Below are positions 8,464 to 43,104 of a stretch of DNA of 64,000 nt, piece after piece. Made by a program: the position numbers and the translations under genes. This DNA is from Mobula birostris. Lineage: Eukaryota. The stretch lies in assembly GCF_030028105.1 (NCBI RefSeq), contig NC_092371.1, forward strand, positions 14,095,884 to 14,159,883. The letters run 5' to 3'. Numbering within the stretch: position 1 is the first letter of the stretch; each line of letters begins with the position of its first letter. The notes under the pieces are model-generated. The model saw only the letters and a list, made by a program, of their open reading frames with translations. It ran no database searches and was not told the DNA's origin.

Positions 8464-8512
8464 ATGTCCCCAGCGCTGCATCTCCTGTGGGTTCTGCTGG
8501 TTCATTTACCAG
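8464..8512 (+). CDS. IgL: Ig light chain cluster 1, leader exon (MSPALHLLWVLLVHLP-)
   Basis: Hydrophobic signal peptide ending at a phase-1 donor G|GTGAGA; 107-bp intron to acceptor TTGCAG at 8619. Confidence 0.92.
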
Positions 8513-8619
8513 GTGAGAGTCGGATCGGTTTACGCACAGATTATCCGTTAAAATTGGGATGACTGCTGATTTTTATTTTGCTCTAAGTCACCCAGTGGTT
8601 TTATTCTGTTTTATTGCAG

Positions 8620-8973
8620 ATATTCACGCGGCCCCAGTGCTCAACCAGACCCCAATGTCTGGACCTGTTTCCGCGGGACAAACTGTCCGCTTAGAGTGTC
8701 GGATGCAGAACGGTAATGTTGGAAGTTACGAGATGTACTGGTACCGACAGCGCCCCGGGGAGAGACCGGAGTGGCTGGTAGAACATGAGACGGACAATGA
8801 TATATACCGAGGGCCAGGGATCACAAACCGTTTTCAACCGTCCAGAGACACCTCCAGTAACAGTCACATCCTGACCATCAGCAGTCTGGAATCCCGGGAT
8901 TCCGCCGTCTATTACTGTGGAGCGTGGGATAATGGAGTTATCTTCGGTCCAGGCACCATCCTAGGTATTAAAA
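8620..8973 (+). CDS. IgL: Ig light chain cluster 1, germline-joined VJ exon (sigma-cart/type I/NS5-like)
   Basis: APVLNQTP..C23..WYRQRPG..DSAVYYC-GAWDNGVI-FGPGTILGIK. V and J are contiguous with no RSS between them; long CDR2 typical of sigma-type chains; donor A|GTAAGT. Confidence 0.95.
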
Positions 8974-9239
8974 GTAAGTGGATTCCTCATTCTGTTACAA
9001 AGAATTCCTACTGCAGCCACTCTCATTCCCCACAGCTGGATAAAATCCCGGCCAGGGAGGGCAGGTTCCATCTGTATCAGTCTGGCATAAGCGCCGTTCA
9101 GCCCATCGATTCAGCCCCAACAATCAAAAATGACGGCTTGAATTGTGACAAGTTTTTTGTTGGACACTTTTGATCAACCTCAGTATGTTTAGTAGAATTC
9201 AATAATTTCTGACATCTCTTCTCTTTAACACATAATATT

Positions 9240-9720
9240 GGTTTAATTTTGCTACTTTTCACAAGATGCAATGAAAAATTTGTCTTGCATACTGTCCATA
9301 AAGATCGCATGATGACGGTGTATTGAGTTAAGCACAGCTTAATGCAGAATAAAAGTTAACAGCCACAGAGGAAGTGCAGTGCAGGTAGATAAGTTACAAG
9401 ATCATAAGGAGGTAGATTGTGAGGTCAATCGTCCATCTTATCGTACAAGAGAACCATTGAATAGACTTATTACAACGGCCCCTCTATGATGTCAAATTAA
9501 AACAATCCCTGCTGTCTACACATACTCCATATCCCTCCATTCTCACCACACTGATGTCTCCATCTAACAGCTTCTTAAACGTCCCTGTCGTATCTACCTC
9601 CTCCAGCTCATGCACCCATCACTCTGTATAAAAAGTAAAAATTCAGGGAACTCTCCCTTCAAAATTTTCTCCTCTCGGCTTAGCTTTCTGCCCTGGGGGA
9701 ATCAATCTTGACTACAGATC
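9240..9720 (-). mobile_element. LINE 3' fragments (Rex1/L2-like and CR1-like) in the J-C intron
   Basis: Resembles reverse-complemented LINE 3' UTRs; present in both clusters (about 41390-41850). Confidence 0.5.
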
Positions 9721-10660
9721 CTATCGCTATCTCATATACTGTCTTGAATGATGCTCACACCTAATTCTGAGTCCCTACCACAAGCATGACATCTACCCCT
9801 CTTCATTCACCATCTCTGAGAACACGTTTGTCGCGAATATTCCATACTTTTGCTGGGTGCGGTAAATCCTGGACCACAGGGCACAATGTTGACCACTACA
9901 AGTTAACGCAATTCTCAGTTTCTGATTAAGAACCGTGTCATTATGATTGTAGAAAACACAGGAGAGAAACGTCAGAATTAAAATAATACATGCTAGGGTA
10001 AGGTGCTGGGCAGACAACAGACTGGTTACAGAGTCGTGCGGCAATAGGCGGGTTACTACGGGTTCGGAATTAAATCTGGATCTGAATGAGTCGTTTCGCC
10101 TTTTCCCGCTTCTCACCGGTTCACAGACCAGCTCTTTTTTCCCGTCATTTTCTCTTCAGCCATTGGGTACCGAGTCTTATGGTTCTATGGTTCTTGGATA
10201 TCCAGTAAGATTTCCCGACCTCGGGGCATCCCAGATAACTTTCTTTCGATAATTAACTGAAGTGTAATATTCTCAGTTATTGTTCTAAGAGTTCAAGATT
10301 TGGGGAGTTATTGGAGAACAACAAGGAACTGGTCTCACTAGAGGGACCAATCATATAGGCACGGTGTGGGCAATTAGAGAGGAGATTGAGTAGTGTTGAA
10401 GTTATCTTCTAACACAATGCAGTACCGAGAGCAGGGTGGATTCAAAAACATTTTTCTTAAATAAATGATGTCACGTCGTAGCCGCACAAGGCTGCGAATA
10501 ATCTGGGCAACTCTTCATTCAACGGTTTGTACCCGAGCAGTCAAATGTGCCGTTTACTGTGTTCCAATGCCTGTGTTAATTTCGGCGCTGCTGTTTCTAT
10601 CTTTGAAAAGCCCATGAAATAATATTGTTTCTATTCCCCTTCGTCTCCTCTCTCACACAG

Positions 10661-10989
10661 GTAGCGATTCCCGGAAGCCCTCAGTTCTCCTGCTCCCTCC
10701 CTCTCCGGAGGAGACCGGCACGGGTTCGGCCACTCTCTCCTGTCTGGTGAATGGTTTTAAGCCGGGCTTGGTAGCGCTGCGCTGGAGCGTGGATGGAGTC
10801 GAGACGGAGAGCGGGGTGACGACAGGCGCCGTGGCCCTGGACAACGATCAGACCTACAGGTTGAGCAGTTACCTGCGGGTAACCACCGCTGCATGGAACA
10901 AGGGCTCGAGTTATTCCTGCAGCGTGAGCCACAGCTCACTGAGCTCGCCGCTCCGCAACACAATCTCGTCGTCCGCCTGTGCGCAGTGA
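10661..10989 (+). CDS. IgL: Ig light chain cluster 1, constant exon (C1-set)
   Basis: Pyrimidine tract + CACAG acceptor; SSDSRKPSVLLLPPSPEE..ATLSCLVNGFKPG..WSVDG..YSCSVSH..SSACAQ*; phase matches the J donor; C-terminal interchain Cys. Confidence 0.96.
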
Positions 10990-11279
10990 GAGTGCGTTGG
11001 CTGGCAGCACACGCAGATTGTTTGTTCTTGTTTAATTCAGTGAAGCAATTACTGTGTCTGTGCAGCAGCCCATTGCAATGTAATTGTGTAGTCATGTTCG
11101 CTTATGGAAACAATCAGAATGTTTAATAATTTCAGAACAGTTGGCAAAAATAATCCATCTTTTGCGAAGGATAATTTTGTGTAGAATTGTCCCCATTGTG
11201 CTGTTTCTGAACTACCACTCTGTGTAGATTCAGGAGCGATCTCCTCTGCTGTGATTGGAATTTGTGTAACACATCTCTA

Positions 11280-11285
11280 AATAAA
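11280..11285 (+). terminator. Probable polyadenylation signal of IgL cluster 1
   Basis: AATAAA about 290 nt after the stop, followed by GT-rich sequence; conserved at 43390-43395. Confidence 0.6.
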
Positions 11286-11751
11286 GGAGGAAACGATGGT
11301 AGATTTATCGTGTCTTGCATTTACTGGGCTGCTGCAAGTATGTTGTGATGAATGGTCGTGGACAACATGCCGTATAGGAGCCTCAATCAGAATTACAGCT
11401 ACATCGACTCCGACATCTTATTCCGCATACTTCTCTCTGTGTCCTGAGCATTCTTTGTCCGTCGCACTCACCCCCGCATTCACCGGAACCTTCTGTTCCT
11501 CGTCGTCCTGCACTTCTGCTCTTCATTTACAATCATCCCCGTGGGAGGGAGATCAACATTCTTACTGCCTTTTGGCCAATGTCTTACCATCATTGAGAGT
11601 GTTACACTGTAGGGATGTTTCCCCGTGACGTGACCATTCTCTCCATCGATTCCGTTAGTTCCTGAATGAAGGCCATCGGCCTCACTTCCCGCCCTGACAG
11701 CACCGTCACCACCCGCCACACCCGCACACTAGCTTCTGTAACTCATAGTTA

Positions 11752-12500
11752 TCTTCAAAGTTTAAGGTAAATTTGTTATCAAAGTCTGTATACGTCTTCA
11801 TATGCGACCCTGAGTTTCATGTTCTTACAGATATTCACAGTAGAATAAAAATGTAGAATAGATGCAGTGAAAAACTACACACAATGACTGAGAAACACAA
11901 AGACAAATAACCGCAAATAAATAAATGGATAGATTGAAAGATAGATAGATAAATAAATAAAACACACATGAATAGATAAACCAATTAAACTCAATCAATC
12001 ATAAATAGATAAACAAACGGATAAAGGTATAATGGATAAATACATAAATAATACTGAGTGCACGACTTTGAAAAGGAGAGTATAGATCATGAAATCATTT
12101 CAGACATGTGGTGATTAAAGTTATCCACTTTGGTTCAGGGGCCTGATGGTTGAACTCTTCCTGACACTTGTCGTGCTGGATCTAAGACTGTAATTGTAGA
12201 TGGGAGAGAGTTGCCTCAGCGCAAAACATATGTAAGATGACTGCAGAGACCGTTTAATTATATTAAAGTTATATCTTGCTTGACCAATAGCGTGGTCTTT
12301 ATGGAAGGTGTGACTGATAGGACGACTGCGAGTTTTAGTTCTTTGTACACACAACGAATTCAGTAACATTTCACACAAGTTACTTACGGTTACCTGACCT
12401 GCTGATTTCTTCAAGAATTTGGTGTAGAAATCTGACTTCGTCATTAATGAGGTTTTTCATGCTGGTTGGGTGGTGTTAACCTGTGCCTGGACTTCCACTG
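11752..12500 (-). mobile_element. Rex1/Babar-type 3' remnants with a degenerate GATA/TAAA-rich stretch
   Basis: Starts 'tcaaagtttaaggtaaatttgttatcaaag' (reverse tail); copy at about 43865-44600. Confidence 0.55.
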
Positions 12501-12829
12501 ACTATTAATGACCATATTAATCACTCTATTTATGGACAATAGAGAGCAACATGAGCTACAATAGAGGAAATAAATCCTTTCCATAAGGTAGAAATCCAAT
12601 GAACAATCGGGCAAATGAAGCCACTCTTGATTTACTGGAACAATTAACATTTTTAACGTTTTAAAGCATCTTTGAAAGTACAAACACTGTCAATCTGATT
12701 ATAAAATACTAAAACAGAAAAATCAATTAACATAAAGTGAATACATTAAATATTACAAAAATTAGCTTTATTTGTCATACTTGGAAATAAACATAGACAG
12801 CTGTGTGGCATCTTGTCAAATGCTTTCTG

Positions 12830-13790
12830 AAAATTCAAGTAAATGACGTCCACTGCCTCTCTTTTGTCCACACCGTTCGTTACTTCCTCGAAGAACTAAC
12901 AGAGTAGTGCAAGATTTCCTTTTGTGGAAACCATGCTGATTTTAACTTAGTTTATCATTAGTCTCCAAGTATCCCGAAACCTTATCCTTCGTCATAGACT
13001 CCAGCAATGCCCAAACACTGAGGTTAGGCTAACAGGCATGCAATTTCATTTCCGAAAGAGTGAAGTAAATTTGTAATTTTGTAGTCCTCCGGGACGATGC
13101 CAGAATGAAGTGATTCCTGAAAAATCATGACTAATGCGTCCGTTTGCTCTTCAGTAACCTCTCTCAGCCACCTTAAGACCCTTTAGTTTGTCTAGCACTT
13201 TTTCCTTTGTAATAACCGTAACATTCACTCCTGCTGCCTGACACTCACGGACCTCCGGCATAACGCTAGTGTCATCCACACTGCGGACAAATGCAATGTA
13301 CCCATTACGATCATCTGCCAGTTCTTTGTCCTCCATTACTACGTCACCAACATTATTTTTCAGTGGTCCAATATAAACTCTCAGCTCCCTTTTACTCTAC
13401 ATGTAACTGCTGATTATTCCATATCATATCATGCCTCTCCAAATATTCATAAATCCTGCCTCTAAGGATTTTCTCCATAAGCTTACCGACTGCTGAAGTA
13501 AGAGTTACTGGTCTATAATTTCCTGGGCTATCTCTACTCCGTTTCTTGAATAATGGAATAACATCCGCAAACCTCCAATCCTCCGGAACCTCTCCCGTCC
13601 CCATTGATAATGTAAAGATCACCGCCAGAAGCTCAGCAATCTCCTCCCTCGCCTCTTGCATTAGCTTGAGGTACATCTCGTCCGGGCCCAGTGACTTATC
13701 CAGCTTGATGCTTTCAAAAAACTCCTGCACATCCTTTTTCTTCGTATCTACATGCTCAAGCTTTTCAGTCCGTATTACCATCCAAACTAG
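12830..13790 (-). mobile_element. CR1 ORF2 fragments
   Basis: DKSLGPDEMYLKL..TGEVPEDWRFADVIPLFKK..GNYRPVTLTSAVGK; copy at about 44935-45880. Confidence 0.88.
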
Positions 13791-13977
13791 CAATGACCAG
13801 CTGAACTGAAATACCTGTTTCCGTGCTGTGGGATTCTGTAATTCTATGAATCTTCTTATTTGATGCCGGTTTAATAGTTCACAGTCATTTTTAATATTAT
13901 CTATGCGAGGTGGTTTGAGCTTGATGACAATTTCTATGCAACCTTTCTGAAAATGTGGGAAACGATGCGATGAAACG

Positions 13978-14130
13978 GTCTTGCATTTCTATAGCGCCTT
14001 TCATGCTCTGGATGCTGCCCAGAGGCTTTTCTTTCCCATTGCGTTTTCTGAGAAGTGCCAGTCAATGGCAAGATCATGACTGAGTGACTGTTAGGAGAAA
14101 GATAAATGTGAATAGACAGTTAGCACAGAG
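13978..14130 (-). mobile_element. L2/DeuSINE-like 3' end remnant
   Basis: Reverse complement reads tgaaaggcgctatagaaatgcaa, resembling the L2-type tail; copy at about 46070-46240. Confidence 0.45.
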
Positions 14131-14164
14131 CACCTCTGTGGCCATTCCCCTTAATAATAACTAT

Positions 14165-14645
14165 ACTGCTTTGGATACCGTTGTGGGTTGACCTCACAGG
14201 AGAACCACGGAGACCGGGTTATTGGCACTGAGCATGTATCCATGGTCCAGAAGGTAAGGAGGAAGAAGAGGGAATCGGGAGTGACAGGGGACTCAATAGT
14301 CAGAGGAACAGACAGGAAATTCAGTGGACGTGAATAGGACACCCGCATGGTATTTTGCCTCTCAGGTGCCAGAGTCAGGGACGTGTAAGATCGCCTCCAC
14401 AAAATTTTGGAGATGAAGGGAGAGCAGCCAGACATCTTGGTACATATTGGTACCAATGACATAGGAAGGAAAAGTAGAGAGGTCCTGAAAAGAGAATATA
14501 GAATGCTAGGCCTAATTTCTGGATTTCTGCCCGTGCCATAGCGCCAGTGAGGTTAGAACGAGGATGATTTGGCAAATTAAGGAGTGCACGGAGCAGGGCT
14601 TCAGGGACATTGCGATCTCTTCTGGAGGAGGCATGACCTGTTCAG
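14165..14645 (+). mobile_element. CR1 ORF1 (esterase-like) fragment
   Basis: GDSIVRGTDR..DTRMV.CL.GARV.DV motifs; copy at about 46255-46655, resuming 48080-48155. Confidence 0.8.
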
Positions 14646-14659
14646 AATACTATTGCGAG

Positions 14660-15790
14660 CTGGATCACACGGTAGCACTCAGATCTGCAGTGATGAAATA
14701 CTTGAAGAGCTTGACCATGACCAGACTGAACTCCTGCCTCAGCAAGGACCTGGACCCATTGCAATTTGCCGATCGCTGCAATAGATCACTGGCAGATGCA
14801 ATCTGAATGGCTCTTCAGACGGTTTTAGACCAGCTGGACACCACAAACAGCTACGTCAGGATGCTGTTCATTGACTACAGCTCAGCATTTAATACCGTTA
14901 TTCCCACAATCCTGACCGAGAAACTGCAGAACCTAGGCCTCTGTACATCCCTCTGCAACTGGATCCTCGACTTCCTAACCGGAAGACGATGATCTATGTG
15001 GATTGATGATAACATCATCTCTTCGCTGACGATCAGCACTGGTTGACCTCAGAGGTGTGTACTTAGCTCACCGCTCTACTCTCCATATACCCATGACCGT
15101 GTGGCTATGCATAGCTCAAATACTATCTATAAATTTGCTGATGATGCAAAAATTGTTGGACGAATTTCAGGTGGTGTCGAGAGGGCGGACAGGAGTGAGA
15201 TATGCCAACTTCCGGAAGGTAAGACGAAGGAACACACACCAATCCTCACAGAGGGATCAGAAGTGGTGAGAGTGAGCAGCTTCAATTTCCTGGTTGTCAA
15301 GATCTCTGAGGACCAAACCTGGTCCCAACATAGTAACGTAGCTATTAATAGTAAAGAAGTCAAGACAGTGGTTATGCTTCATTGGGAGTTTAAAGAGATT
15401 TGGTATGCCAAGAAATACACTCAAAACTTCGATAGATGTACTGTAGAGAGCATTCTGACAGGCTGCATCATTGTTTTAGTATGGGGTAGGGGTGGTTGTG
15501 CTACTGCACAGGACCAAATAAAGCTGCAGAAGGTTATAAATTTAATCGGCTCCATCTTGGGTACTAGCCTACAAAGTATCCAGGACATCTTCAAAGAGCG
15601 CTGTTTCAGAAAGACAGCGTCCATTATTAAGGTAGGCTAGCACCCAAGGCATGCCCTTTGCTCACTGTTACCATCGGATAGGAGATACAGAAGCTTGAAG
15701 GCGTACACTCAGCGATTCAGGAACATCTTCTTCCCCTCTGCCATCCCATTCTTAAATGGACATTGATCCCTTGGACACTAACTGATATTT
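14660..15790 (+). mobile_element. Rex1/Babar LINE RT fragment inserted in CR1 ORF1
   Basis: [45 protein letters not shown]; stops and frameshifts. Confidence 0.88.
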
Positions 15791-17454
15791 AGCTATTATT
15801 ATTAAAGTGTTCTATGACCCAATGAATCTCTTGTTGAATCCCCAAATTAGGAATGCATTGAAGTCAGCGGTATTGACAGGTTAGTGGAGGGTAACAATAT
15901 AAGGGGTTTGGCAAATTGCATTGGTGGAGTAGGTGCATTTTCATACATGCAGTGCGACAGTATTGCACTGCTAAATCGTACAATAATCTCAAAACTTCTC
16001 TGCCGAAAGCATATTGGTTTACATAATCCCACGGTCAAACAATAGCGATTCCTTCCCAGTGTATAGAGGTGACAGTGGTCACTCAAATAACCGGAGGAAA
16101 ATCGATGACCCAGTCTGTTTATTTGACTACTCTGTTCCATTCATTACAGAGTTTATTGATTTTTCACTCTTGTTGTAATGTCAGCAATTGTGACATGCGA
16201 TACGGAAATGAAAGCTCATTATTTGCTTGCTTATCGTGTCTCGTTTGATACACTTCCTTTGTATTCTCTGCTACCGCTGCATGGTCGCTCGTGGAACTTC
16301 CAGCAGCTGCTTTTCCCGCTTCTATGCCGCTTACCCACCGCCGGCTAGGCCTGTGCCCATATCCTGACCAATACATTTTAATTTATACAACTGACAAACC
16401 ACTTGGTTTCAGAATTTGCTGGGTATTATTGGGAATAGAGCTTTACATTACTCTGAGATGCTGAAACATCATCAGTATTCTGCGCATAATGTTCATATAT
16501 TTCCAAAATTCAATTTTGCCGGTGGAGTAATTCATTGCCTGAAAAAAAAACAAATCAGCTCCGCAGATTATCCAGAAGCGTTTGCACATTCGGCTTAATA
16601 ATACTTCAGAAAAATTGTGAAGACTCCCATCACGTTCTTTTCCAGAGATCTTAAACCCGCAGGTTTCTTCAGTCGATTTATTTGTGCTTCTGGCCTTAAT
16701 GTTATGTGTCAGCGGAATTTCAGTCTTTGCACCTGTTTAGGCCGTGAGCTTTTCGGCTGCGTATTTGCCGCACGAAAACCAGCAATGTGGAAGTTTCATA
16801 AAATAGGTTTAATTTCCCTACAAGTTTGAAGTTTCAACGCTGATTTTAATGTGGAAATTAAGGTGATCTGAAATGTGGTTCTGATGACTGGTTAGAAAGA
16901 AGGCGAAAACTATTGCTGCTGTTCTTGGTGACGGTTGAGGTGAGTTATGGGAAAGTTCAGAATGAGGCAGAAAACCTTGAAAACATAGACAGACTGTTCA
17001 GCAGTGGCCTTATGCAGACCCCTTCCTCAATTTCACAGACTGTAATGCGAACAAAATTAGAGGGAAAAGAAAACAATAAACGCTAGGCCAAACAGGACCG
17101 TCAAATAAAACTCTCAAATGGAAAACGAAGCCTACACTGCGGCTGGAAGGAATGACTAAATATAAAACGAATACTGCCAGTCTTCAGAGTTAGTTGACTG
17201 GACAGTCCGATTTCTTAGGCAAGGCCGAAGGTAAGCAGGCAGCCAAGCGTTGCTGTGCTGGGTTCAAATCTCGACAAGCACCATGATGGAAAGAATGGAG
17301 TCAAATATTATCACGATAAGATAATAATTAGCTGACACGTGCATATCCAGGAGATCAATTGCGTATCTTCTGCGCTGCTGAATGCGTGGTTATGAAACTA
17401 GTTGTATATGTCAGCGTGGCGATTGCTTAAATACTCCAAATTAAAGATATTTGG

Positions 17455-19445
17455 GATCAAATTTCAAAGTTCAAGGTAATTTTATTATCAAAATACACAT
17501 ATGTCACCATATACAAAGCTAAGATTCGTCTTCTTACGGGCATCGTCAGTAAGTCCACGAACCAGAACAGAATCAATGAAAGACCACACCCAATAGAATA
17601 GAAATACACTCTGTGTGCGAAAGACAAAAAACTGTGTAAATACAAAATATAAATAAAGAACTACTAATAAATAAATAACGGATACATAAAGAATATGAGA
17701 AAAGAGAGCATGGTCTGTGTGGTGGGAGTGCTCGATGATTGATGCTGCTTTCCGGGGACAGCCCCTCCTTCCGGATGTCTCAAATTGTGGGAACGGATTG
17801 AACGTGATGGACTGGACGTTAGCCGCTACTTTTTATCGGATATTCCGTGAAAGCGCATTGGTGCGTCTCCATGCCAGGCCGCGATGCAAACAGTCAATAC
17901 ACCCTCTAGTACACATCTATGGACGTTTGTAAAAGTTTTAGATGTCATGCCGATGCTTCGTAAGTTTCTAAGGAAGGAGAGACGGCACCGTGCTTTCGTT
18001 GTAACTGCACTTTCGTGCAGAGCCCAGGACAGATTCTCTGAAACAGAAACGCCGAGGATTTAATAATTGCTGACCCTCTCCACCCCTGATCGTCGAAGTA
18101 GGACTGGTTCTTGGACCTCCAGTTTCCTCCTCCTGAAGCTAATATTCAGCTCTTTCTTTTGTTTACCTTGAGTGAAAGGATGTTGTTGTGGCACCATTGA
18201 GCCAGATTTTCAATCTGTTGATTCGTTACCAGCTTTGATTGGGAAAACAACAATGGTGTCATTAGCAAACTTATTTATGGCTCGTAGCAGTGCTTAGCCT
18301 CACCTTCATAAGTGTACAGCGAGTAAAGTACACGTCCTTTTCCTGCAGACGTGCTGATGAAAATTGTGTAAGAATTGTTTTTGCTAATCCAAACGGGCTG
18401 GGGTCTAGAATTGAGGAAATCGAGGATCTAATTGCACAAGGAGGCATTAAGGCCAAGCTCCTGAAGCTTATTGGTTTAGATTTCGGGGGTGATGGTGCTG
18501 AATGCCGAACGGTCGTTGATAAAGACCAACCCGTTGTATGCATTCTTGCCGTCCAGATGCTCCAGGGGTGAGTGAGAAGGCAATGAAAAAGTACTTGATA
18601 CGCTTCTGTTATGCCAATAGACAGATTGGAGATGATCCAGGTCGTTTCTCAGGCAGCTGTTGATATGTTTCATCACCAACGTCTCAAAGCGCTTAAAAAC
18701 GGTGGATGCAATTATGCGACTGAGCGAGAGTCACTGAGGAAGATTCCGACGATCTTCGAAGGCACCGGTATAATTGAAGCCTGCTTGAAGATTGCGAGTA
18801 CATCACACTGCTAAGGCATGAGATTAGAAACATAGGCGAACACTCCAGCCAGTTCATTAGCACAGGTATTTTCATACCCGGCCAGGTACTCCATTTGGGC
18901 CCGATGCTTTCCGTGGGTTCACTCGTCTGAAGGATGCTCACACTTCAACTTCAAGACTGAGATCACAGGGCCATCATGCGCTGTAGAAGTTCCTGAACGT
19001 TCCTCCTTGTTTTGACAGTCAAATCAACTTTAGAAGGCATTGATCTCATCTGGCTCCGAAGCCCTGCTGTTGCCTATGTAACTTAGTTTCAGTTGGTAAG
19101 AGGTAATGACATTCCAGCCTTCCCACAGCTGTCAAGCATTCTCCAGTGATTGAATATTTGTCCGGAATTGCTGCATCGCCTGTGAGATGGCTGTCCGGAG
19201 ATCGTACCTGGACGTCTTGTATCTTACTGGCTTACCAGATCTGAAATCCAGTGAGCTAGCCCTCTTCAGATTGCGGATCTCATAGCTCAACCAGGGTCTC
19301 TGGTGGGGAAAGATTCTGAATGATTTTCGAAGTACTCACTCATGTACGGTTGTTTTTAGACACTCCGTGACAACCGTTCGGTGTTCATTCAGATACTCAG
19401 GTGTGGCCCAGTCCACCGACTAGAAGCAGTCCAGGGGCGATCGTC
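17455..19445 (-). mobile_element. Rex1/Babar LINE, decayed (tail at 17455)
   Basis: Reverse tail 'ttcaaagttcaaggtaattttattatc'; RT-like MVMKHINSCLRNDLD..F.D.RSAFSTI. Only the distal about 190 bp survives in B (48165-48360). Confidence 0.8.
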
Positions 19446-19499
19446 CCTTTGTTGTCCCTTTGTTGGGTACGAGGCGAGAAAACCCATCCTGTAAAAACC

Positions 19500-19845
19500 T
19501 AGAGCCAGAGCGTGGATCAGCACTTGAAGCTATGATGTTGTGTCCATCGCAGAGACTTGGATGGTGCAGGGGCAGGAATGGCTACTTCAAGTGCCAGGCG
19601 TTAGATGTTTCAGAAAGCACAGGGAGGGAGGCAAAAGAGGTCGGAGCGTGATTAGAGACAGTGTCACGGCTGCAGAAAAGGAGGAAGCCAAGGAGGGGTT
19701 GTCTACAGAGTCTCATATGGGTGGAAATTAGCAATAGGAAGGGGTCAATAACTCTACTGGGTGTTTTTTATAGACAGCCCAACAGTAAAAGGGACATCGA
19801 GGAGCAGATAGGGAAACAGAGTCTGGAGAGGAGTAATAATGACAA
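19500..19845 (+). mobile_element. CR1 endonuclease fragment
   Basis: YDVV.I.ETW, WVEI.NRKG..TLLGVFYRQPNS; copy at about 48435-48770. Confidence 0.8.
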
Positions 19846-19849
19846 GGTT

Positions 19850-21225: not shown

Positions 21226-21269
21226 GTTAAAGGCAGGGAGAAAAGATTTAAAACCACTGTGAAACTTCC

Positions 21270-25340: not shown

Positions 25341-25479
25341 GAGGTCGGCGTGCTCCCTAATCACGAAGTATGTCTGAATTAGCAGAAGACGACAAAGTGT
25401 GATAACCCTTCAGGCAGGAAAGAAATAAACAGTCAATGAATGTCTGAAAGAATGTGTCGAAGTGAAGGATGGCACCAGT

Positions 25480-33582: not shown

Positions 33583-33614
<32 letters not shown>

Positions 33615-36600
33615 CCCTCCCTCCTCACGCTCTCCTTTCTCTCTCTGCTTCTGCCTCTATCTCCCCTTCCTCCGTCTGTCTCCTAACTGTCTCTCCCTAT
33701 CTCTCACACACAGTCTCTCCGCTCACATTCTTATCTTACTAATTTTGCCTCACTTGCCAGTGCTTTTCCTTTCACCACATCCCCGTTTCCCACCCCGCTC
33801 TCACCGACTCACCCTCTGTCTCTCCGATTTCCCATAACTCATTCAACCTCTCTGTTTCCCTGTCCCTCTGGCGCCCCATTCATCGCTTGTCAGAACTAAT
33901 TACAATTGTGTAAGCTTTTCTTTTCAAGAATTAGTAACAAAATGTGTCTCTTCTCATTACTGCAGTTTCTCAGATTGAGAGAATTTTAAAAAGTTCTGTC
34001 GTATATCATCAACGCCCCCACCTTCGCGGGACGTCGTGTCCGCGCCACCTGCACCACTTCACAAACAGGACAGAAACAGCAGCAATTTGTGTAACTGTCA
34101 CTAAATAAAGGCTGTGCAAACCCCGTCCCGGTCCCGTGGGAAGATGACGCGGTCCGCAGCTGCATCAGTGCCGCTTACAACACAGACAGTTGGACCCTAT
34201 CTATCTATCCGTCCCATCCTCGACTCTGGTCAGCGACTAAAAAAAATCATGGGGCCCTGGGTGAGAAAATTTAAAGCCCCTGACTGAATGAGGGAGAGGT
34301 TAACTGGACTGACCAGTGTCCTACGGTCAGGCCGGGGTTGAGGGAGAATTACCATATCCTAGTTTATGAACGACACGTGGTCATACTTTAATCACCATCT
34401 CCAATTATCTAACAAGAGGAAATCAACAGAACAAGCCTTACACAACCCAAACCGCAGGATAATATTCCACAAATAACAAAGGCCGATGTTTCACAGTGGC
34501 GTTATCAGATAAACGTTGTTATCGTCTCACATAGTTCGAACTTTTAATTCGATGAAATTTCTTCTCATCTATTGCACAGTATCCTAACATGGTGGCAGAA
34601 TGAAGGCTGGGTGGTGATGAACTAAATCATGGACAAGAGAACGGAGATTTGATGTCCCACACGTGACTCACTGTTAATAACATCCTTCATTGAGTGAGGA
34701 TCAGCAACAGAATCAGGTACAATATCACTGTCAAATGTCGTGAAATTTGTTGTTTGTTCCCCAGAGTGCTGAGGACCCGATTAAAATAAACATGGACTGT
34801 CATAGAGTAATAGAGCACCACAACACCGAATCACGCCTTTCGGTCCATCTAGTCTGTTCCAAGCTATTAATATGGTTAGTCCCGTCATTCTGCACTCGGA
34901 CCATCTGCATGCATACCCCGCCCTCCATCCAAATTTCTCTGAAATGTTAAAATCGACCCTCATCCATCACAACTACTGGTAACTCTTTCTACACTCTCAC
35001 CATCCTTTGAGTGAAGAAGATTCTCCCGATGGCCCCTTTAAACATTCCAGATTTCTCCCTTATACCAGACCTCTAGTTGTAGTTTCACCCTATATCATTG
35101 GAAAATAGCCCGCTAATATTTTACCCTTCGTATATCCCGCTGGAGTGGCGTAGTTGGGGACACGAAGATCCACCAGAACTGCCAATGTAAGTACGTAGGA
35201 AAAAGGTTAAAATGGAATTTTAATTTGTGTCAATTTCAAATTCAAAATAGGAACAATCGGTAGTAAATAAATAAAGCGTCGGTAAACGAAAGGCCAACGT
35301 GACACTCTACACTCTTTGCAGGCGGTATGACTAAGAAGGTATTTCCGGTCAAGAAAAAGGCAGAAAGAGAGAGAGAGAGAGGAGAGAAGAAGACTAGAAA
35401 ACATGTTTTTCGGATCTTAGTCATGGAGAGATGCCTAAATCTATAAGTAAGACCATAAGACCATATGACACAGGAGCAGAATTAGGCCATCGGGCCCGTC
35501 GAGTTTGCTCCGGCATTCAATCATGGCTGATCCTTTTTTAAATCTCCTCCTCAACCCCAATAAAAAACCTGTCAATCTCTACCGTAAATACACCGAACGA
35601 CCCGGCCGCAACAGCTGCATATGGAAACAAATTCCACAAATCCAACACCCTTTGTCGAAGGAGAATACTCCACATCTCTGTTTTGAAAGGGCGCCCCTCT
35701 ATCCTGAGGCTGTGCCCATTTGTCCTAGATTCTCCCACCATGGGACACGTCCTTTCCACTATCTCAAGGCCTGTCAACATTCGAAAGGTTCAATGAGATT
35801 CCCCCTCATCCTTCTGGATTCCAGCGAGTACAGACCCAGAGCCATTAAACCTTCCACGAATGATAACCCTTTCATTCCTGGAATCATCATTGTGAACCTC
35901 CTGTGGATCGTCTTCAATGACAGCACATCCTTTCTGAGATGAAGGGCCCGCGCTCTTGTATTCTAGACCGCTTGAAATAAATGCCAACGTAGCATTTGCC
36001 TTCCTCATCACCGACTCAAACTGAAAGTAAAGTTCAGAATGTTCTGCTCAAGGACTTCCAAGTCCCTCTGCATCTCAGGTTCTTCGATTTTCCCACCGTT
36101 TAGAAAATAGACCGCACGTTTATTTCTACTACCCAAAGAGCATGACAATGCATTTTGCAACATTATATTTCATTTGCTACTTTCTTGCCCATTCTCCTAA
36201 CCTGACTAAGTCCTTTGCGCAACACTACCTGTCCCTACACCAATCTTCTTATCATCTGCAAACTTGGCAACAAAGCCATCTATTCCATCAACTAGATCAT
36301 TTATACACAGCATAAAACGAAGTGGTCCCAACACCGACCCCTGCGGAACACCACTAGTCACTGGCAGCCAACCAGAAAAGGATTATTTTATTCCTACTGT
36401 CTGCCTCCTACAAATCAGCCAATGTTCTAATCGTGTTAGTAACTTTCCTGTAATACCATGGGCTCTTAACTTGGTAAGCAGCGTCATGTGTGACACCTTG
36501 TCAAAGGCCTTCTGAAAGTCCAAATATACAACAGCTACTGCATCCCCTTTATCCTATCGCCAATTTCAAAGAATTCCAACAGGTTCGTCAGGCAGGATTC

Positions 36601-36908
36601 TCCCTGATTTTCTCCTATGTTGTCCTGTGTCACCAAGTAGTCCATCACCTCATCCTTAACAATTGACTCTGACATCTTCCTGAACACTGAGGTCAGGCTA
36701 ACTAGTCTATAATTTCATTTCTGCTGCCTTCTTAATTTCTTAAAGAGTGCAATAAGATTTGAAATTTCATGGTCGTGTGGTGCCATGCCAGAGTCCTATT
36801 AGCTTTGAAAGATCATATTTCATGACACCACAGTCTCTAGCGCTACCTCTTTCAGAACACAAGGTTGCAATTCCTCTGGTTCCGGTGACTCATGTACATT
36901 TAGCACCT

Positions 36909-38167
36909 AACATCAGGAATTCTGCAGATGCTGGAAATTCAAGCAACACACATAAAAGTTGCTGGTGAACGCAGAAGGCCAGGCAGCATCTCTAGGAAGA
37001 GGTACAGTCGACGTTTCAGGCCGAGACCCTTCGTCAGGACTAACTGAAGGAAGAGTGAGTAAGGGTTTTGAAAGTTGGAGGGGGAGGGGGAGATCCAAAA
37101 TGATAGGAGAAGACAGGAGGGGGAGGGATGGAGCCAAGAAATGGACAGGTGATAGGCAAAAGGGATACGAGAGGTTTATGGGACAGGAGGTCCGGGAAGA
37201 AAGACAAGGGGGGGGGGGGGGAGGATCCAGAGGATGAGCAAAGGATATATTCAGAGGGACAGAGGGAGAAAAAGGAGATTGAGAGAAAGAATGTGTGTAT
37301 AAAAATAAGTAACAGATGGGGTACGAGGGGGAGGTGGGGCATTAGCGGAAGTTAGAGAAGTCGATGTTCATGCCATCAGGTTGGAGGCTACCCAGACGGA
37401 ATATAAGGTGTCGTTCCTCCAACCTGAGCGTGGCTTCATCTTTACAGTAGGGGAGGCCGTGGATAGACATGTCAGAATGGGAATGGGATGTGGATTTAAA
37501 ATCTGTGGCCACTGGGAGACCCTGCTTTCTCTGGCGGACAGAGCGTAGATGTTCAGCAAAACGGTCTCCCAGTCTGCGTCGGGTCTCGCCAATATATACA
37601 GGGCCACATGGGGAGCACGGGACGCAGTATATCACCCCAGCCGACTCACAGGTGAAGTGTTGCCTCACCTGGAAGGACTGTTTGTGGTCCTGAATGGTGG
37701 TAAGGGAGGAAGTGTAAGGGCATGTGTAGCACTTGTTCCGCTTACACGGATAAGTGCCAGGAGGGAGATCAGTGCAGAGTGATGGGGGGGAGGGGGGACG
37801 AATGGACAAGGGAGTTGCGTAGGGAGTGATCCCTGCGGAATGCAGATGGTGGGGGGGGAGGGAAAGATGTGCTTAGTGGTGGGATCCCGTTGGAGGTGGC
37901 GGAAGTTACGGAGAATAATATGTTGGACCTGGAGGCTGGTGGGGTGTTAGGTGAAGACCAGGGGAACCCTATTCCTAGTGGGGTGGCGGGAGGATGGAGT
38001 GAGAGCAGATATACGTGAAATGGGGGAGATGCGTTTAAGAGCAGAGTTGATAGTGGAGGAAGGGAAGCCCTTTCTTTAAAAAAGGAAGACATCTCCCTCG
38101 TCCTAGAATGAAAAGCCTCATCCTGAGAGCAGATGCGGCGAAGACGGAGGAATTGCGAGAAGGGGAT
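36909..38167 (-). mobile_element. Young Penelope-like element fragment, unit B only (GIY-YIG domain with open frame + terminal repeat)
   Basis: ORF 37342-37809: YPCKRNKCYTC..VIYCVPCSPCGPVYIGETRRRLGDRFAEHLRS..GMNIDFSNFR; absent from A and C. Confidence 0.93.
37006..37041 (-). ncRNA. Minimal type I hammerhead ribozyme motif (PLE-associated)
   Basis: Minus strand AGUC-CUGACGA-AGG GUCUCGG CCU-GAAA-CGUC/GACU: perfect core, 4-bp stem I, GUC cleavage triplet, palindromic loopless stem III. Confidence 0.75.
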
Positions 38168-40413
38168 CCTCATTTCCCCCAGAAACACACATTATTGCTG
38201 CTCTCCCTGTTCCACTCTCTATTGAGTTCCCTGTCACTACTGCTCCTTTCTTCTCTCTCATTCGCTTCTGCACCACGGACCCATGCGAAGTGCCTGCAAC
38301 CCGGTCGCCGTGGCATTCTCTCGGGTGGTCTTCCTCCACAGAAGTATCCAAAGCGGTATACTTGTTTTTGAGGGTTATGGCCACAGGAGTACTCTTCTCT
38401 AACTGCCCATTTCCATTTCTCCTGACAGTCACGCAGCTACTCTCCTCTTGCAACTTCGGGGTGACTACTTCCTTGTAACTTTGATCAATTATATCCTCGC
38501 TCTCCTCACATTAAGGAAGTGACTGCAGATCACCCGGGACACAGGGTTAGAAAACGTGATCGGCAAATCTCTTGGTGATCTCTTGGTAATCGTGTCATAA
38601 CTTACGCAGTGGATCGATTCGCAATCAGCGGACATGGTGCATGTTGATTATCAGCAGGCCACATGTGAAGTGATTCTCAAGAGTTCGCTTTGAAAGGAAA
38701 TGCAGCTGTTCACAGTGTACATCCAAACAAATGGACAAGGGAACGAAGTGTAATATTGCCATGTTTGTTGGTTATCAGGGTTATCAGGACAGTGCAGAAT
38801 GACTGAGTTGATGTTCACAGAGCAAAACAGGCAGGGATAAGAAATACCGAATAAAATGTGGAAAACTTGAGGTGATGTGCAGAAAAAATGTTCTAAATTG
38901 GAGTCTCTTTCAATGGCGAAAGGGTGAAGTCATGTTTGCAAGTTCATGTTGCAGTTTACTGCCAATTAACCATACAGATATAAACAAACGAACCACCTTT
39001 CCTCTGAGGCCAAGGTGAATAACACAGTAGCTAAAGCTAGACACATTAGATACAGTAACGATCCAACACAGGCAGTGAGAAAATAGATGTTTGCACAAGT
39101 GTCTGAGCGGCATGGCCTGAAGATCGACCAGTTGACATAAAGTGTGAAGTGAATATTTACGTAAGGGAAAATAATGTTTATTTATCCATCTATTTATGTA
39201 TGTCTGTATTTATTTGTTTGTATTTGCACAGTTTGACTTATTTGGCACATTGGCTGTTTGTTCGTCTTAGTATTTAGCTTTACATTGCTTCCATTGTATT
39301 CCTTTATATGTATTTTGAATGCCCACAAGTCAATGAAACTCAGGTTTGTGTATAATGACTTACCGCACTTTGACAGTAAATTTATTTTGAACTTTGAGTT
39401 TTATAATTCCAAGCCTGTGACCACCGACTGATTTATAAGCCTCAATTTAATCAATCCAGTGGTTTCTGATCAGTGGTCCTCCCCAGAGGTTGATGGCGAA
39501 GTAAGGTCATGGAACGTCACGGGCTGGTGGTCAGATCCTTTCCTGTTGACAGAGCACATTGCTAGAACTAATGTAGTCAGGCAGAAGTTTGCTCCTACTA
39601 GTCTTGCATGACTATTTTCGGAGTCTTGTTTCATGTCTTGATATCTCACTGTCGGAAAATTACATGAATGGGGTTTCAGATGAACGTTCTCGGACGTAAA
39701 CGGCGACTGCCTATTTCCCTGCATAGGTACTACCTGATCAGTTCAATCCTTCCAGCTTTTTCTGACTTGCTCCAGATTCCAGCATCTGCATCCGTTTGCA
39801 TCACCGGTGCAATCATTGCTGAACATCCCTAATTCCCATCTAATGTTACCCGGAAGGTTCACTGCCGAGAGGAGCACTCCTGATGCTCTGCTGCGTTGAT
39901 TGCATTCCACTGCAACCCCTTTGCACAATGACTGACCCCAATATCCGACGTCGAATGAAATTCTGCCCAGGCCCGCTTCAGAGACTACAGACAAAAACAC
40001 TTGTCGGTTGAGAGTTACGCATTTTAGCGACAAACTTTATTCTCTGATAAGCAGAGTAGCGACATGCTTTCTGCAGGAATGATATATGCAGATAGGAACC
40101 AATGCGTTGTCGAGGTAATTTTAGGATGGCATAGAGACCTTGTAGTAATTTGATGTGATCTTAAAAAGTTTTGTTCGAATTAGCCATTCTGAGGAGAAAC
40201 GAGGCGTCGAATGCCACCACCACCCACACCTACTATTCCAGAGGGAAGCAGCCAAAATAATGTCTAAAATAATTTTAGCCTGAGCATTCTCCAAAGTTCT
40301 GCAGGCCTGGATATGTAATACAACTGAAGATGAAACAATCTTGAAATTCGGGGTTAAGGTTTTAAAAATCAGCAAGATGGCCATTCAAAGTTTCTGAAGG
40401 TAAGCTAGTCAAT

Positions 40414-40469
40414 CTCCGCCCACATTCTTTCCCTGGCTCCGCCTACTCATTTACATCGCAATTAATAAA
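40414..40469 (+). promoter_or_regulatory. IgL cluster 2 promoter: GC boxes, ATTTACAT (40449-40456), ATTAATAAA (40461-40469)
   Basis: Homologous to 8291-8345. Confidence 0.7.
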
Positions 40470-40587
40470 CGGACCCGAAGACCCCAGTTTGCTGACTCTG
40501 AAAGCGGAGGGCTTCCCGAAGTGTGCAGAACAACGCATGGTTCGGTCGGAATTTTTGGGCGCTCGCTGTCTGCACCTGTCCGGAGGA

Positions 40588-40636
40588 ATGTCCCCAGCGC
40601 TGCATCTCCTGTGGGTTCTGCTGGTTCATTTAGCAG
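40588..40636 (+). CDS. IgL: Ig light chain cluster 2, leader exon (MSPALHLLWVLLVHLA-)
   Basis: Phase-1 donor G|GTGAGA; 106-bp intron ending TTTTAG at 40742. Confidence 0.92.
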
Positions 40637-40742
40637 GTGAGAGTCGGATTGGTTTACGCCGGATTTTCTGTTAAAATTGGGATTACTGCTGATTTTTATT
40701 TTGCTCCAAGTCACCCAGTGGTTTTATTGTGTTTTATTTTAG

Positions 40743-41096
40743 ATATCCAAGCGGCCCCAGTGCTCAATCAGACCCCAATATCCGGACCTGTTTCCGCGGG
40801 ACAAACCGCCCGCTTACAGTGTCGGATACAGAACGGTAATGTTGCAAGTTTACACATGAGCTGGTACCGACAGCGTCCCGGGGCGAGACCGGATGGGTTG
40901 CTAGTACATGAGACGGACAATGACATATACCGAGGGCCAGGGATCACAAACCGTTTTCAGCCGTCCAGAGACACCTCCAGCAACAGTCACATCCTGACCA
41001 TCAGCAGTTTAGAACCCCGGGATTCCGCCGTCTATTACTGTGGAGCGTGGGATAATGGAGTTATCTTCGGTCCAGGCACCATCCTGGATATTAAGA
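40743..41096 (+). CDS. IgL: Ig light chain cluster 2, germline-joined VJ exon (sigma-cart/type I/NS5-like)
   Basis: 354 nt as in copy 1; open frame, both Cys and the Trp retained; YYC-GAWDNGVI-FGPGTILDIK; donor A|GTAAGT. Confidence 0.95.
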
Positions 41097-42778
41097 GTAA
41101 GTGGATTCCTCATTCTGTTACAAACAATTCCTACTGCAGCCACTCTCATGCCCCACAGCTGGATAAAGTCCCGGCCAAGGGGGGCAGGTACCATCTGTCT
41201 CAGTCTGGCATAAGGGCCGTTCAGCCCATCGAGTCAACCCCAACAATCAAATTAATGACCGCTTGACTTGTGAACAAATTTTTTGTTGGACACTTTTGAT
41301 CTACTTCAGTCGGTGTAGCAGAATTCAATACTTTCCGACATACCTTCTCTTTAACACAATAGGCTCCGTGCATTGTATTATTAGTATTGGTTTACTTTTG
41401 CCACTTTTCACAAGATACAATGAAAAATTTGTTTTGCATACTGTCCGTAAATATCACGTGATGACGGTGCATTGAGTTAAGCACAGCTTAATGCAGAATA
41501 AAAGTTAACAGCCACAGAGGAAATGCAGTGCGGGCAGATAAGTTGCAAGATCATAAGGAGGTAGATTGTGTGGTCAATCATCCATTTTATTTTATCAGAG
41601 AACCATTTAATAGTCTTATTACAGCGGCCCCACTATGATGTCAGATTAAACCAATCCCTGCTATCTGCACATACTCCATATCCCTCCATTCTCAGCACAC
41701 TCATGTCTCCGTCTAACAGCTTCTAAAACGTCCCTATCGTGTCTACCTCCTCCAGCTCGTGCACCCATCGCTCTGTATAAAAGGTAAAAATTCACCGAAC
41801 TTCTCCTCTCGGCTGAGCTTTCTGCCCTGGGGAAAAAATCTTGACTGTCGATCCTATCGCTATCTCACATACTGTCTTGAATAATGTTAACACCTAATTC
41901 TGGGTCGCTACCACAAGCATGACATCTACCCTTCCCTCTTCATTCACCACCTCTAAGAACATGTTTGTCGCGAATATTTCATAATTTTTCTGGGTGCGGT
42001 AAATCCTGGACCACAGGGCAGGACGTTGACTGCTCTAAGTTAACGCAATTCTCAGTTTCTGATTAAGAACCGCGTCATTATGATTGTAGAAAACACAGGA
42101 GAGAAACGTCAGACTTAAAAAAAATACACTATGGGAAGGTGCTGGGCAGACAACAGACAGGTCACAGAGTTGAGCGGCAACAGGCGGGTTAGTACCGGTT
42201 CGGAATGATATCTGGATATGAACGAGTCGTTTCGCCTTTTCCCGCTTCTCTCCGGTTCACAGACCAGCTCTTTTTTCCATCATTTCCTCTTCAGCCACTG
42301 GGTACCGAGTCTTGGATATTCACTGAGCTTCCCCGACTTCGGGACATCCCAAAGAACCTTCTTTCTATCATTAACTGAAAGTGTAATACTCTCAGTTATT
42401 TTCCTAAGAGTTGAAGATTTGGGGAGTTATTGAGAACAACAAGGAACTGGTCTCACTAGAGGGACCAATCATATGGGCACGGTGTGGGCAATCAGCAAAG
42501 AGATTGAGTAGTGTTGAAGTTCTCTTTTAGCACAATGCAGTACCGAGAGCAGAATTGATTCAAAAACATTTCTCTTAAATAAACGATGTGACCTCGCAGC
42601 TGTGCAAGGCTGCGAATAAATCGGGCAACTCGTCATTCAAAGCTTTGAGCCTGAGGGGTCAGATGTGCCGTTTACTGTGTCCCAATGACTGTGTTAATTT
42701 CTGCGCTGGTGTTTCTGTCTTTGAACAGTCCATGAAATAATATTGTTTCTATTCCCCTTCGTCTCCTCTCTCACACAG

Positions 42779-43104
42779 GTAGCGATTCCCGGGAGCCCTC
42801 AGTTCTTCTGCTCCCTCCCTCTCCGGAGGAGACCGGCACAGGTTCGGCCACTCTGTCCTGTCTGGTGAGTGGATTTAAGCCGGGCTTGGTAGCGCTGCGC
42901 TGGAGCGTGGATGGAGTCGAGACGGAGAACGGGGTGACAACAGGCGCCGTGGCCCTGGACACTGACCAGACCTACAGGCTGAGCAGTTACCTGCGGCTAA
43001 CCACCGCTGCCTGGAACAAGGGCTCGAGTTATTCCTGCAGCGTGAGCCACAGCTCGCTGAGCTCGCCGCTGCGCAACACCATCTCTTCATCCGCCTGTGC
43101 GTAG
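42779..43104 (+). CDS. IgL: Ig light chain cluster 2, constant exon
   Basis: Acceptor CACAG; 20 nt differences from copy 1, mostly synonymous; ends SSACA*. Confidence 0.96.

What the first reader, a model, noticed from the sequence alone, without database searches (positions are those of the whole stretch)
8464..43104. Tandem array of germline-joined sigma-cart IgL clusters amplified from one pre-rearranged VJ joint
Seen: two complete L-VJ-C genes 32,124 bp apart, head-to-tail, with no RSS. They are identical for 70 nt across FR3 end, CDR3 and J (8893-8962 vs 41016-41085; CDR3 GAWDNGVI), although the surrounding units differ by about 5-10%. Established: cartilaginous fish organise Ig genes as clusters, and type I/sigma-cart light chains can be germline-joined. 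Inference: one germline V-J joining event was fixed and then multiplied with about 30 kb of flanking TE DNA, giving a family of non-rearranging light chains with a shared invariant CDR3.
Basis: partly seen in the sequence, partly recalled or inferred. Interest (0 to 1): 0.85.

Follow-up and report, generated by a model that had tools for sequence, protein, structure and literature searches.

The report
Germline-joined manta ray light-chain gene array
The window holds two intact, highly expressed antibody light-chain genes of the giant manta ray whose V and J parts are already fused in the genome; skates have been known to have such genes since 1995, so this is a new example of a known arrangement.

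Summary
Two complete L-VJ-C immunoglobulin light-chain genes lie head-to-tail 32,124 bp apart (ATG 8464 and 40588). Neither has an RSS, and they share an exact 70-nt run, 8893-8962 = 41016-41085. The window is Mobula birostris chromosome CM057557.1, and both genes are already RefSeq models (XP_072139804, XP_072139820). They are type I (sigma-2, formerly sigma-cart) light chains, 74% identical to the Leucoraja erinacea type I chain. RNA contigs cover only the exons, at very high depth, and carry GT..AG splice joints specific to each unit.

The 70-nt run is just the fifth longest exact run in the 8.5-kb aligned block. The CDR3 is not invariant in the family: six paralogs spread over more than 0.5 Mb all have the joint at the same position and an 8-codon CDR3, but they differ by replacement substitutions (29 nonsynonymous, 0 synonymous pairwise differences). 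The same 8-codon joint sits in a single exon in Hemitrygon and Pristis, while the Heterodontus homologue is split by RSSs. The joint therefore predates this array by far.

[quoted passage not shown] This is a new member of a known kind. Other notes of this scan report similar germline-joined clusters elsewhere in the same genome.

The parts
8325..8345 (+). Unit 1 promoter motifs: octamer-like ATTTACAT (8325-8332) and TATA-like TAATAAA (8339-8345)
   Evidence: Motif scan. The same pair occurs in unit 2. RNA coverage begins at about 8381-8400. Promoter function is inferred, not shown.
8464..8512 (+). Unit 1 leader exon (CDS part), MSPALHLLWVLLVHLP
   Evidence: Translation. GT donor at 8513. RNA joint 8512>8620 in run X6.
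8620..8973 (+). Unit 1 fused VJ exon. CDR3 GAWDNGVI at 8919-8942, J motif FGPGTILGIK, no RSS.
   Evidence: V-set domain, E 4.9e-16. No heptamer. 100% match to XP_072139804. An exact RNA contig at 8702-8769 is specific to unit 1 among the six paralogs compared.
10661..10989 (+). Unit 1 C exon with C-terminal Cys and stop TGA at 10987-10989
   Evidence: C1-set domain, E 1.4e-23. RNA joint 8973>10661 with GT..AG ends in three RNA runs.
40449..40469 (+). Unit 2 promoter motifs: ATTTACAT at 40449 and TAATAAA at 40463
   Evidence: Motif scan.
40588..40636 (+). Unit 2 leader exon
   Evidence: Translation. RNA joint 40636>40743 in X6, X7 and X8, including the unit 2-specific leader variant TTAGCAG.
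40743..41096 (+). Unit 2 fused VJ exon. CDR3 GAWDNGVI at 41042-41065.
   Evidence: V-set domain, E 5e-15. Identical to XP_072139820. An exact 246-nt spliced contig in X8 covers 40741-40954.
42779..43104 (+). Unit 2 C exon, stop TAG at 43102-43104
   Evidence: C1-set domain, E 1.4e-23. Exon-only RNA depth.
1..30842 (+). Repeat unit A of the tandem segmental duplication. It starts before the window.
   Evidence: Self-BLAST: 1-753 = 30843-31595, 758-4159 = 31950-35362, 6038-14536 = 38167-46625, at 88-91% identity.
30843..57145 (+). Repeat unit B, about 26.3 kb
   Evidence: Self-BLAST: 31283-36908 = 57394-63115 and 38167-38772 = 63392-64000.
57146..64000 (+). Start of repeat unit C. By extrapolation its VJ exon would lie about 2.5-3 kb beyond the window end.
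   Evidence: Self-BLAST. The extrapolation is inference.

Best explanation
These are two functional, expressed, germline-joined type I (sigma-2, formerly sigma-cart) immunoglobulin light-chain miniclusters of Mobula birostris. They are neighbouring members of a head-to-tail tandem array. Its 26-32 kb units consist of one L-VJ-C gene plus LINE-rich spacer, and related paralogs lie over at least 0.5 Mb of chromosome CM057557.1.

The fused VJ exon is transcribed from its own promoter and spliced L-VJ-C without any RAG step. Each gene therefore contributes one fixed light-chain V domain with no combinatorial or junctional diversity.

The joint itself is ancient. Its position and 8-codon CDR3 are shared with other Myliobatiformes and with a sawfish, so it predates the local duplications. 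It most likely arose from a RAG-type V-to-J joining in germ cells of an early batoid, because shark homologues are split and both introns are retained.

Later segmental duplication multiplied the joined cluster. The paralogs then diverged by point substitution: replacements concentrate in the CDRs, CDR3 included, while the frameworks and the C domain are under purifying selection.

The identical 70 nt of the two units reflects common descent, constraint on FR3 and FR4, and some chance, possibly with some gene conversion.

Shown here: gene structure, absence of RSS, isotype affinity, expression and splicing, the same joint in six paralogs and in two other genera, and the split control. Inferred: a RAG-mediated germline origin, a single origin, and function as a germline-encoded repertoire.
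For: - Structure and intactness.
- No RSS and no other V or C exon.
- Species and RefSeq identity.
- Isotype: 74% identity over 225 aa to Leucoraja erinacea 'type I immunoglobulin light chain', and 62-66% to the Heterodontus chain.
- Tandem repeat. LINE RT and endonuclease fragments in the spacer.
- Further paralogs at 14.207, 14.299, 14.397 and 14.623 Mb, against 14.104 Mb for unit 1. All are joined at the same nucleotide position with an 8-codon CDR3.
- A joined single exon with the homologous junction in Hemitrygon (L006) and Pristis (L007), versus Heterodontus (L008) with V-12RSS ... 23RSS-J.
- The batoid genes form one clade (SH-aLRT 99) apart from the shark genes.
- pN/pS is 0.32 in the frameworks, 0.16 in C and 2.7 in CDR1; CDR3 has 29 nonsynonymous and 0 synonymous pairwise differences.
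- RNA: exon-only depth of 10^4 to 10^5 against about 0-20 in introns, GT..AG joints and unit-specific exact contigs for both genes.
- Literature: at least 89 type I clusters in Raja, all joined, expressed, with CDR-biased replacements (PMC2192082). [quoted passage not shown]
Against: - The tissue behind the assembly and the DNA runs is unknown, so the joint in germ-cell DNA is shown only indirectly, through many paralogs and three genera.
- Only 6 M. birostris paralogs plus 2 foreign loci were examined as DNA. The other CDR3s come from Gnomon protein models, which can splice V to J across an RSS spacer. The Heterodontus model P0021 did exactly that.
- A second batoid subfamily (YGPG J motif, CDR3 of 8-10 residues) and the skate chain (CDR3 two codons longer) could stem from separate joining events. 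DNA for that subfamily could not be retrieved.
- The RNA evidence is short Logan contigs, so no single record spans L-VJ-C.
- One J-C joint laid on unit 2 carries G where the genome predicts A. It probably comes from another paralog.
Confidence: 0.85

Rival explanations
1. One reading: one recent germline V-J joining in this lineage was fixed and then amplified with its 30-kb flank, producing a family that shares one invariant CDR3.
For: Units 1 and 2, and a third gene 519 kb away (P0003), all encode GAWDNGVI. All six paralogs have the joint at the same position.
Against: Other array members differ in CDR3 by 1-3 replacements. CDR3 diversity of 0.10 equals that of intron 1. The homologous joint is present in the DNA of Hemitrygon and Pristis, so joining long preceded the amplification. 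M. hypostoma genes interleave with M. birostris paralogs in the tree.
Confidence: 0.08
2. Gene conversion or unequal exchange between array members keeps the FR3-CDR3-J tract, and also the promoter and leader, identical between some units. On this view the 70-nt identity is recent homogenisation rather than retained ancestry.
For: Five exact runs of 70 nt or more were seen against 0.47 expected. The distant P0003 shares the CDR3 while nearer paralogs do not. Another first-stage note calls unit C a mosaic of A-like and B-like tracts.
Against: The long identical runs also lie in non-coding DNA, and the longest is the promoter and leader, so rate heterogeneity or constraint is enough to explain them. 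FR3 upstream of 8893 has pS of about 0.2 between the two units. No formal conversion test was run.
Confidence: 0.15
3. The fused VJ exon is primordial: a light-chain V exon that the RAG transposon never split.
For: The gene has no RSS and an intact single VJ exon.
Against: The batoid clade nests among elasmobranch type I genes. The Heterodontus member is split, with canonical 12- and 23-spacer RSSs. The junction has the layout of V end plus J start. The published view favours joining after the batoids diverged (PMC2193156).
Confidence: 0.03
4. An artefact: a somatically rearranged lymphocyte allele was captured by the assembly.
For: None beyond the unknown tissue source of the assembly.
Against: Six loci in one assembly and loci in two other genera carry the same joint with no N or P diversity. 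DNA-run contigs match exactly.
Confidence: 0.01

Closest known systems
Type I immunoglobulin light-chain clusters of the little skate Raja/Leucoraja erinacea (Anderson et al. 1995, PMC2192082)
   Same: Same isotype, at 74% amino-acid identity over the mature chain. V and J are fused in the germline and there is no RSS. The family is multigene, expressed, and has replacement substitutions concentrated in the CDRs. [quoted passage not shown]
   Different: The species and order differ (Myliobatiformes). The manta CDR3 is two codons shorter than that of the skate cDNA compared. This report adds the chromosomal layout: head-to-tail units of 26-32 kb, with paralogs over at least 0.5 Mb. The 1995 work could not see that layout.
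Horn shark Heterodontus francisci type I light-chain clusters (split V-J-C)
   Same: Orthologous isotype (V 62%, C 66% identity) with the same L-V ... J-C minicluster plan.
   Different: In Heterodontus, V and J lie about 370 bp apart and are flanked by 12- and 23-spacer RSSs. In the manta they are fused.
Nurse shark germline-joined NS4 (kappa) and NS5 (sigma-2) genes (Lee et al. 2000, PMC2193156; review PMC5192425)
   Same: Germline-joined light-chain genes that are attributed to RAG activity in germ cells and are expressed without somatic rearrangement.
   Different: In the nurse shark only a minority of clusters are joined, the joints are recent, and expression is mainly neonatal. Here every gene examined in the array is joined and the joint is ancient. 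The developmental stage of the RNA samples is unknown.

Membership tests
Cartilaginous-fish Ig light-chain minicluster (L-V-J-C) | A leader exon, a V-set domain with Cys23, Trp and YYC, a J motif FGxG, a single C1-set domain with a C-terminal Cys, and canonical splice sites | tested here: met
Type I / sigma-2 (sigma-cart) isotype | Closest sequence affinity to reference type I chains (Leucoraja type I, Heterodontus type I) | tested here: met
   74% identity to the Leucoraja erinacea 'type I immunoglobulin light chain'. All 53 database hits belong to the same family, including the Heterodontus chains. The equivalence of type I, sigma-2 and sigma-cart is taken from PMC5192425.
Type I / sigma-2 (sigma-cart) isotype | Placement inside the sigma-2 clade, excluding kappa, lambda and sigma, in a tree with all four isotypes | not tested
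   No kappa, lambda or sigma reference sequences were fetched. The tree holds type I relatives only.
Germline-joined Ig genes | V and J contiguous in one exon, with no RSS heptamer or nonamer | tested here: met
   The split Heterodontus control behaves as expected.
Germline-joined Ig genes | The joint is present in germ-cell or non-lymphoid DNA | not testable with these tools
   The tissue of the assembly and of DNA runs X1-X4 is not disclosed. Indirect support comes from six paralogs and two other genera with the same joint.
Germline-joined Ig genes | The joined gene is expressed as a spliced mRNA | tested here: met
   Exon-only RNA depth, GT..AG joints and unit-specific exact contigs for both genes.
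Raja-type 'all joined' type I system | No split member of the isotype exists in the genome | tested here: inconclusive
   All 6 M. birostris genes seen as DNA are joined. The other paralogs were seen only as protein models. DNA for P0004 and P0048 was not retrievable.

The most novel reading that the evidence does not exclude
All batoid sigma-2 light chains descend from a single germline V-J joining more than about 200 Myr ago. The joined cluster then became the only form of this isotype and expanded into long tandem arrays. CDR3, having lost junctional diversity, is diversified in the germline by positively selected replacement substitutions. The result would be an inherited, RAG-independent light-chain library whose physical array structure can now be read from chromosome-level assemblies.
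Probability: 0.5. Interest if true: 0.35.

Novelty: new member of a known kind. Interest (0 to 1): 0.25.

Why it matters
The finding extends the skate 'all joined' type I light-chain system to a myliobatiform ray at chromosome scale.

- The joined clusters sit in a head-to-tail array of 26-32 kb LINE-rich units.
- The junction is homologous across at least two batoid orders.
- CDR3 still evolves by replacement substitution even though it has no junctional diversity.

A 2025 paper notes that the genomic distribution of Ig miniclusters in cartilaginous fish is not well known (PMC12227049), so a full census of this array would be useful descriptive immunogenetics.

It does not overturn anything. 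The genes are already annotated in RefSeq, and the principle has been known since 1995.

Tried and rejected
- I tested whether the 70-nt identity is exceptional. It is not: it ranks fifth among exact runs, and the shuffle test points to general rate heterogeneity.
- I tested 'invariant CDR3' against paralogs and rejected it.
- I considered a processed retrocopy as the origin of the fusion and rejected it, because both introns are retained.
- I considered somatic-rearrangement contamination and rejected it.
- I tried to fetch DNA for the M. birostris paralogs P0004 and P0048 and for Hemitrygon P0025, to check the second subfamily. The look-ups returned no DNA.
- A first motif-based exon extraction failed because one paralog has the donor GTGACA. 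I replaced it with alignment-based extraction.
- A megablast of the VJ exon against L003 returned nothing, although the exon is there. A longer query resolved this.
- A search of the held paper library found no description of Mobula Ig light-chain loci.
Full report
**What is in the window**

On the + strand there are two three-exon genes.

| Part | Unit 1 | Unit 2 |
|---|---|---|
| Leader exon | 8464-8512 | 40588-40636 |
| VJ exon | 8620-8973 | 40743-41096 |
| C exon | 10661-10989 (stop TGA) | 42779-43104 (stop TAG) |

All donors and acceptors are GT..AG. Each VJ exon is a V-set domain that runs straight into the J motif FGPGTIL(G/D)IK. Each C exon is a C1-set domain ending in a C-terminal cysteine.

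The window holds no RSS-like heptamer-spacer-nonamer and no other V or C exon. The ATG-to-ATG distance is 32,124 bp. An octamer-like ATTTACAT and a TATA-like TAATAAA lie about 125-140 bp upstream of each ATG. Their promoter role is inferred.

**Origin of the window**

The unit 1 protein is 100% identical to XP_072139804.1 and the unit 2 protein to XP_072139820.1. Both are named 'immunoglobulin lambda-1 light chain-like' in Mobula birostris and lie on the 250.7-Mb chromosome CM057557.1 at about 14.10-14.16 Mb. The RefSeq models start at upstream in-frame ATGs. The hydrophobic leader starts at the ATGs given above.

**Isotype**

The best informatively named relative is the Leucoraja erinacea 'type I immunoglobulin light chain', at 74% identity over 225 residues. 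The Heterodontus francisci chains follow, at V 62% and C 66% identity. Type I, NS5, sigma-cart and sigma-2 are names for one isotype (PMC5192425). I did not build a tree with the kappa, lambda and sigma isotypes.

**The repeat**

Self-comparison shows a head-to-tail segmental repeat at 88-91% identity. Unit A runs to about 30,842, unit B covers 30,843-57,145, and the start of unit C covers 57,146-64,000. The period is 30.8 kb and then 26.3 kb. The difference comes from insertions in unit A.

The spacer holds degenerate non-LTR retrotransposon pieces, with RVT_1 and Exo_endo_phos matches. It also holds one 32-bp minisatellite per unit.

The family continues well beyond the window. Paralogs lie at 14.207, 14.299, 14.397 and 14.623 Mb. 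The DNA between them was not read, so I cannot say the array is continuous.

**The 70-nt identity**

The run is exact and maximal. It is only the fifth longest exact run in the 8.5-kb block, which is 89.8% identical overall. The promoter and leader share 120 nt, and non-coding stretches share 102, 84 and 79 nt.

Shuffling the mismatches predicts 0.47 runs of 70 nt or more, against 5 observed. The rate heterogeneity is therefore general rather than a property of the junction. Identity of the 24-nt CDR3 alone has p of about 0.08.

**Is the CDR3 invariant?**

It is not. Six M. birostris genes aligned as DNA all have the joint at the same nucleotide position and an 8-codon CDR3. They read GAWDNGVI (three genes), ATWDNGVI, AAWDNGAI and AAWDNAVV. 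Further RefSeq paralogs read QTWDNGVI, QTWDNGLI, AGWDNGFI, AVWDDEYI and AAWDSGYI.

Nucleotide diversity by region across the six genes:

| Region | Diversity |
|---|---|
| CDR3 | 0.10 |
| Intron 1 | 0.09 |
| FR4 | 0.03 |
| Leader | 0.02 |
| C exon | 0.05 |
| CDR2 | 0.22 |

Nei-Gojobori counts give pN/pS of 0.32 for the frameworks, 0.16 for C and 2.7 for CDR1. CDR3 has 29 nonsynonymous and 0 synonymous pairwise differences.

This is the pattern Anderson et al. reported for Raja: differences fall preferentially in the CDRs, and replacements exceed neutral changes (PMC2192082). The two units in the window differ mainly in CDR1 and FR2, as another first-stage note says. The 'frozen CDR3' holds only for this pair and one distant gene.

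**Age of the joint**

In Hemitrygon akajei (L006) and Pristis pectinata (L007), the VJ region is also a single exon with the homologous 8-codon junction, AAWDSGVI and AAWDSGCI. In the control Heterodontus francisci (L008), V ends in CACAGTG, a 12-nt spacer and ACAAAAACT. J lies about 370 bp further on, behind a 23-spacer RSS.

Gene models of M. hypostoma and Hypanus sabinus show the same 8-residue pattern.

In a protein tree the batoid genes form one clade (SH-aLRT 99) apart from the shark genes. M. hypostoma, Hemitrygon and Hypanus sequences interleave with the M. birostris paralogs. The joint therefore predates the split of Myliobatiformes and Rhinopristiformes, and the subfamilies predate the Mobula species.

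This agrees with the published view that joining followed the divergence of the batoids (PMC2193156).

One caveat applies. A second batoid subfamily (YGPG J motif, CDR3 of 8-10 residues) and the skate cDNA (CDR3 two codons longer) might reflect indels or separate joinings. DNA for that subfamily could not be fetched.

**Expression**

Three RNA runs of the same species cover only the exons. Summed word depth is 10^4 to 10^5, against about 0-20 in the introns.
- The joint 8973>10661 (GT..AG) appears in three runs, and the leader-VJ joint in one.
- An exact contig at 8702-8769 spans the CDR1-FR2 stretch that distinguishes unit 1 from the other five paralogs.

For unit 2, laid at 99% likeness:
- The leader-VJ joint appears in three runs and includes the unit-specific leader variant.
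- A 246-nt spliced contig matches 40741-40954 exactly.
- One J-C joint laid on unit 2 has G where the genome predicts A. It probably comes from another paralog.

The DNA run shows no such joints. The contigs are short, so no single record spans the whole mRNA. Tissue and age of the samples are not disclosed.

**Mechanism**

Each unit is a self-contained gene that needs no RAG step; this is shown by its structure and its spliced RNA. The fusion is not a retrocopy, because both introns are kept. The joined state is most simply derived from a split ancestor through RAG-type joining in germ cells. This is inferred from the tree, the split control and PMC2193156.

Segmental duplication then multiplied the joined cluster together with its spacer (shown). 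Germline point substitution diversified the CDRs under selection, which the pN/pS values support. Gene conversion may contribute to the long identical tracts, but I did not test this formally.

**Comparison and verdict**

This is the manta counterpart of the Raja type I system: at least 89 clusters, all joined, expressed, and without junctional diversity (PMC2192082, PMC5192425).

The result is a new member of a known kind, and the genes are already annotated in RefSeq. Its value is descriptive, because it gives the array architecture at chromosome scale. The held paper library has no description of Mobula IgL loci, and a 2025 paper notes that the distribution of miniclusters is poorly known (PMC12227049). 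Other first-stage notes of this scan report similar germline-joined clusters elsewhere in the same genome.

Noticed in passing
window 244-521, 31079-31346, 57382-57453: A 32-bp minisatellite (consensus GGCTGGGGTCTTGAGGCTTGAGCTGGGAGACA) occurs once per repeat unit, with 8.7, 8.4 and 2.2 copies. The copy number therefore varies between units.
   Followed up: partly
window 854-2126, 29081-30062, 49501-51119 (- strand), 58265-59431: Degenerate non-LTR retrotransposon ORFs (RVT_1, Exo_endo_phos) make up much of the spacer between the light-chain genes. One copy, at 49267-50420, is inverted relative to the others.
   Followed up: partly
window 15800-24500 versus unit B: Unit A is about 4.5 kb longer than unit B (30.8 kb against 26.3 kb). 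Parts of 15.8-24.5 kb have no counterpart, or a rearranged one, in unit B (19256-20175 matches 48167-49099, and 19849-20429 matches 36908-37477). This points to insertions or rearrangement after the duplication.
   Followed up: no
P0056 (M. hypostoma XP_062925920, 1151 aa): This RefSeq model fuses two sigma-2 light-chain clusters with a third, unrelated V-like domain (...YFCAAQFYGEFGNGSKLVVT...). It is probably an annotation chimera. It hints that another Ig- or TCR-type gene lies next to the array in the sister species.
   Followed up: no
L008 (Heterodontus francisci CM071081.1) 3481-3960: The RefSeq model P0021 joins V to J by treating the RSS-flanked spacer as an intron. Protein models alone therefore cannot show that a cluster is germline-joined.
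   Followed up: yes
P0026 (Squalus acanthias light-chain cDNA): A squalomorph shark type I cDNA cluster has the same 8-residue CDR3 pattern (AVWDSGYI) as the batoid joined genes. Whether Squalus type I loci are joined or split was not determined.
   Followed up: no
window 41095/42778 joint in RNA runs X5, X7: A J-C splice contig reads ...ATTAAG-GGTAGCG, where unit 2 predicts ...ATTAAGA-GTAGCG. It differs from the genome by one letter and probably comes from a paralog not examined.
   Followed up: partly
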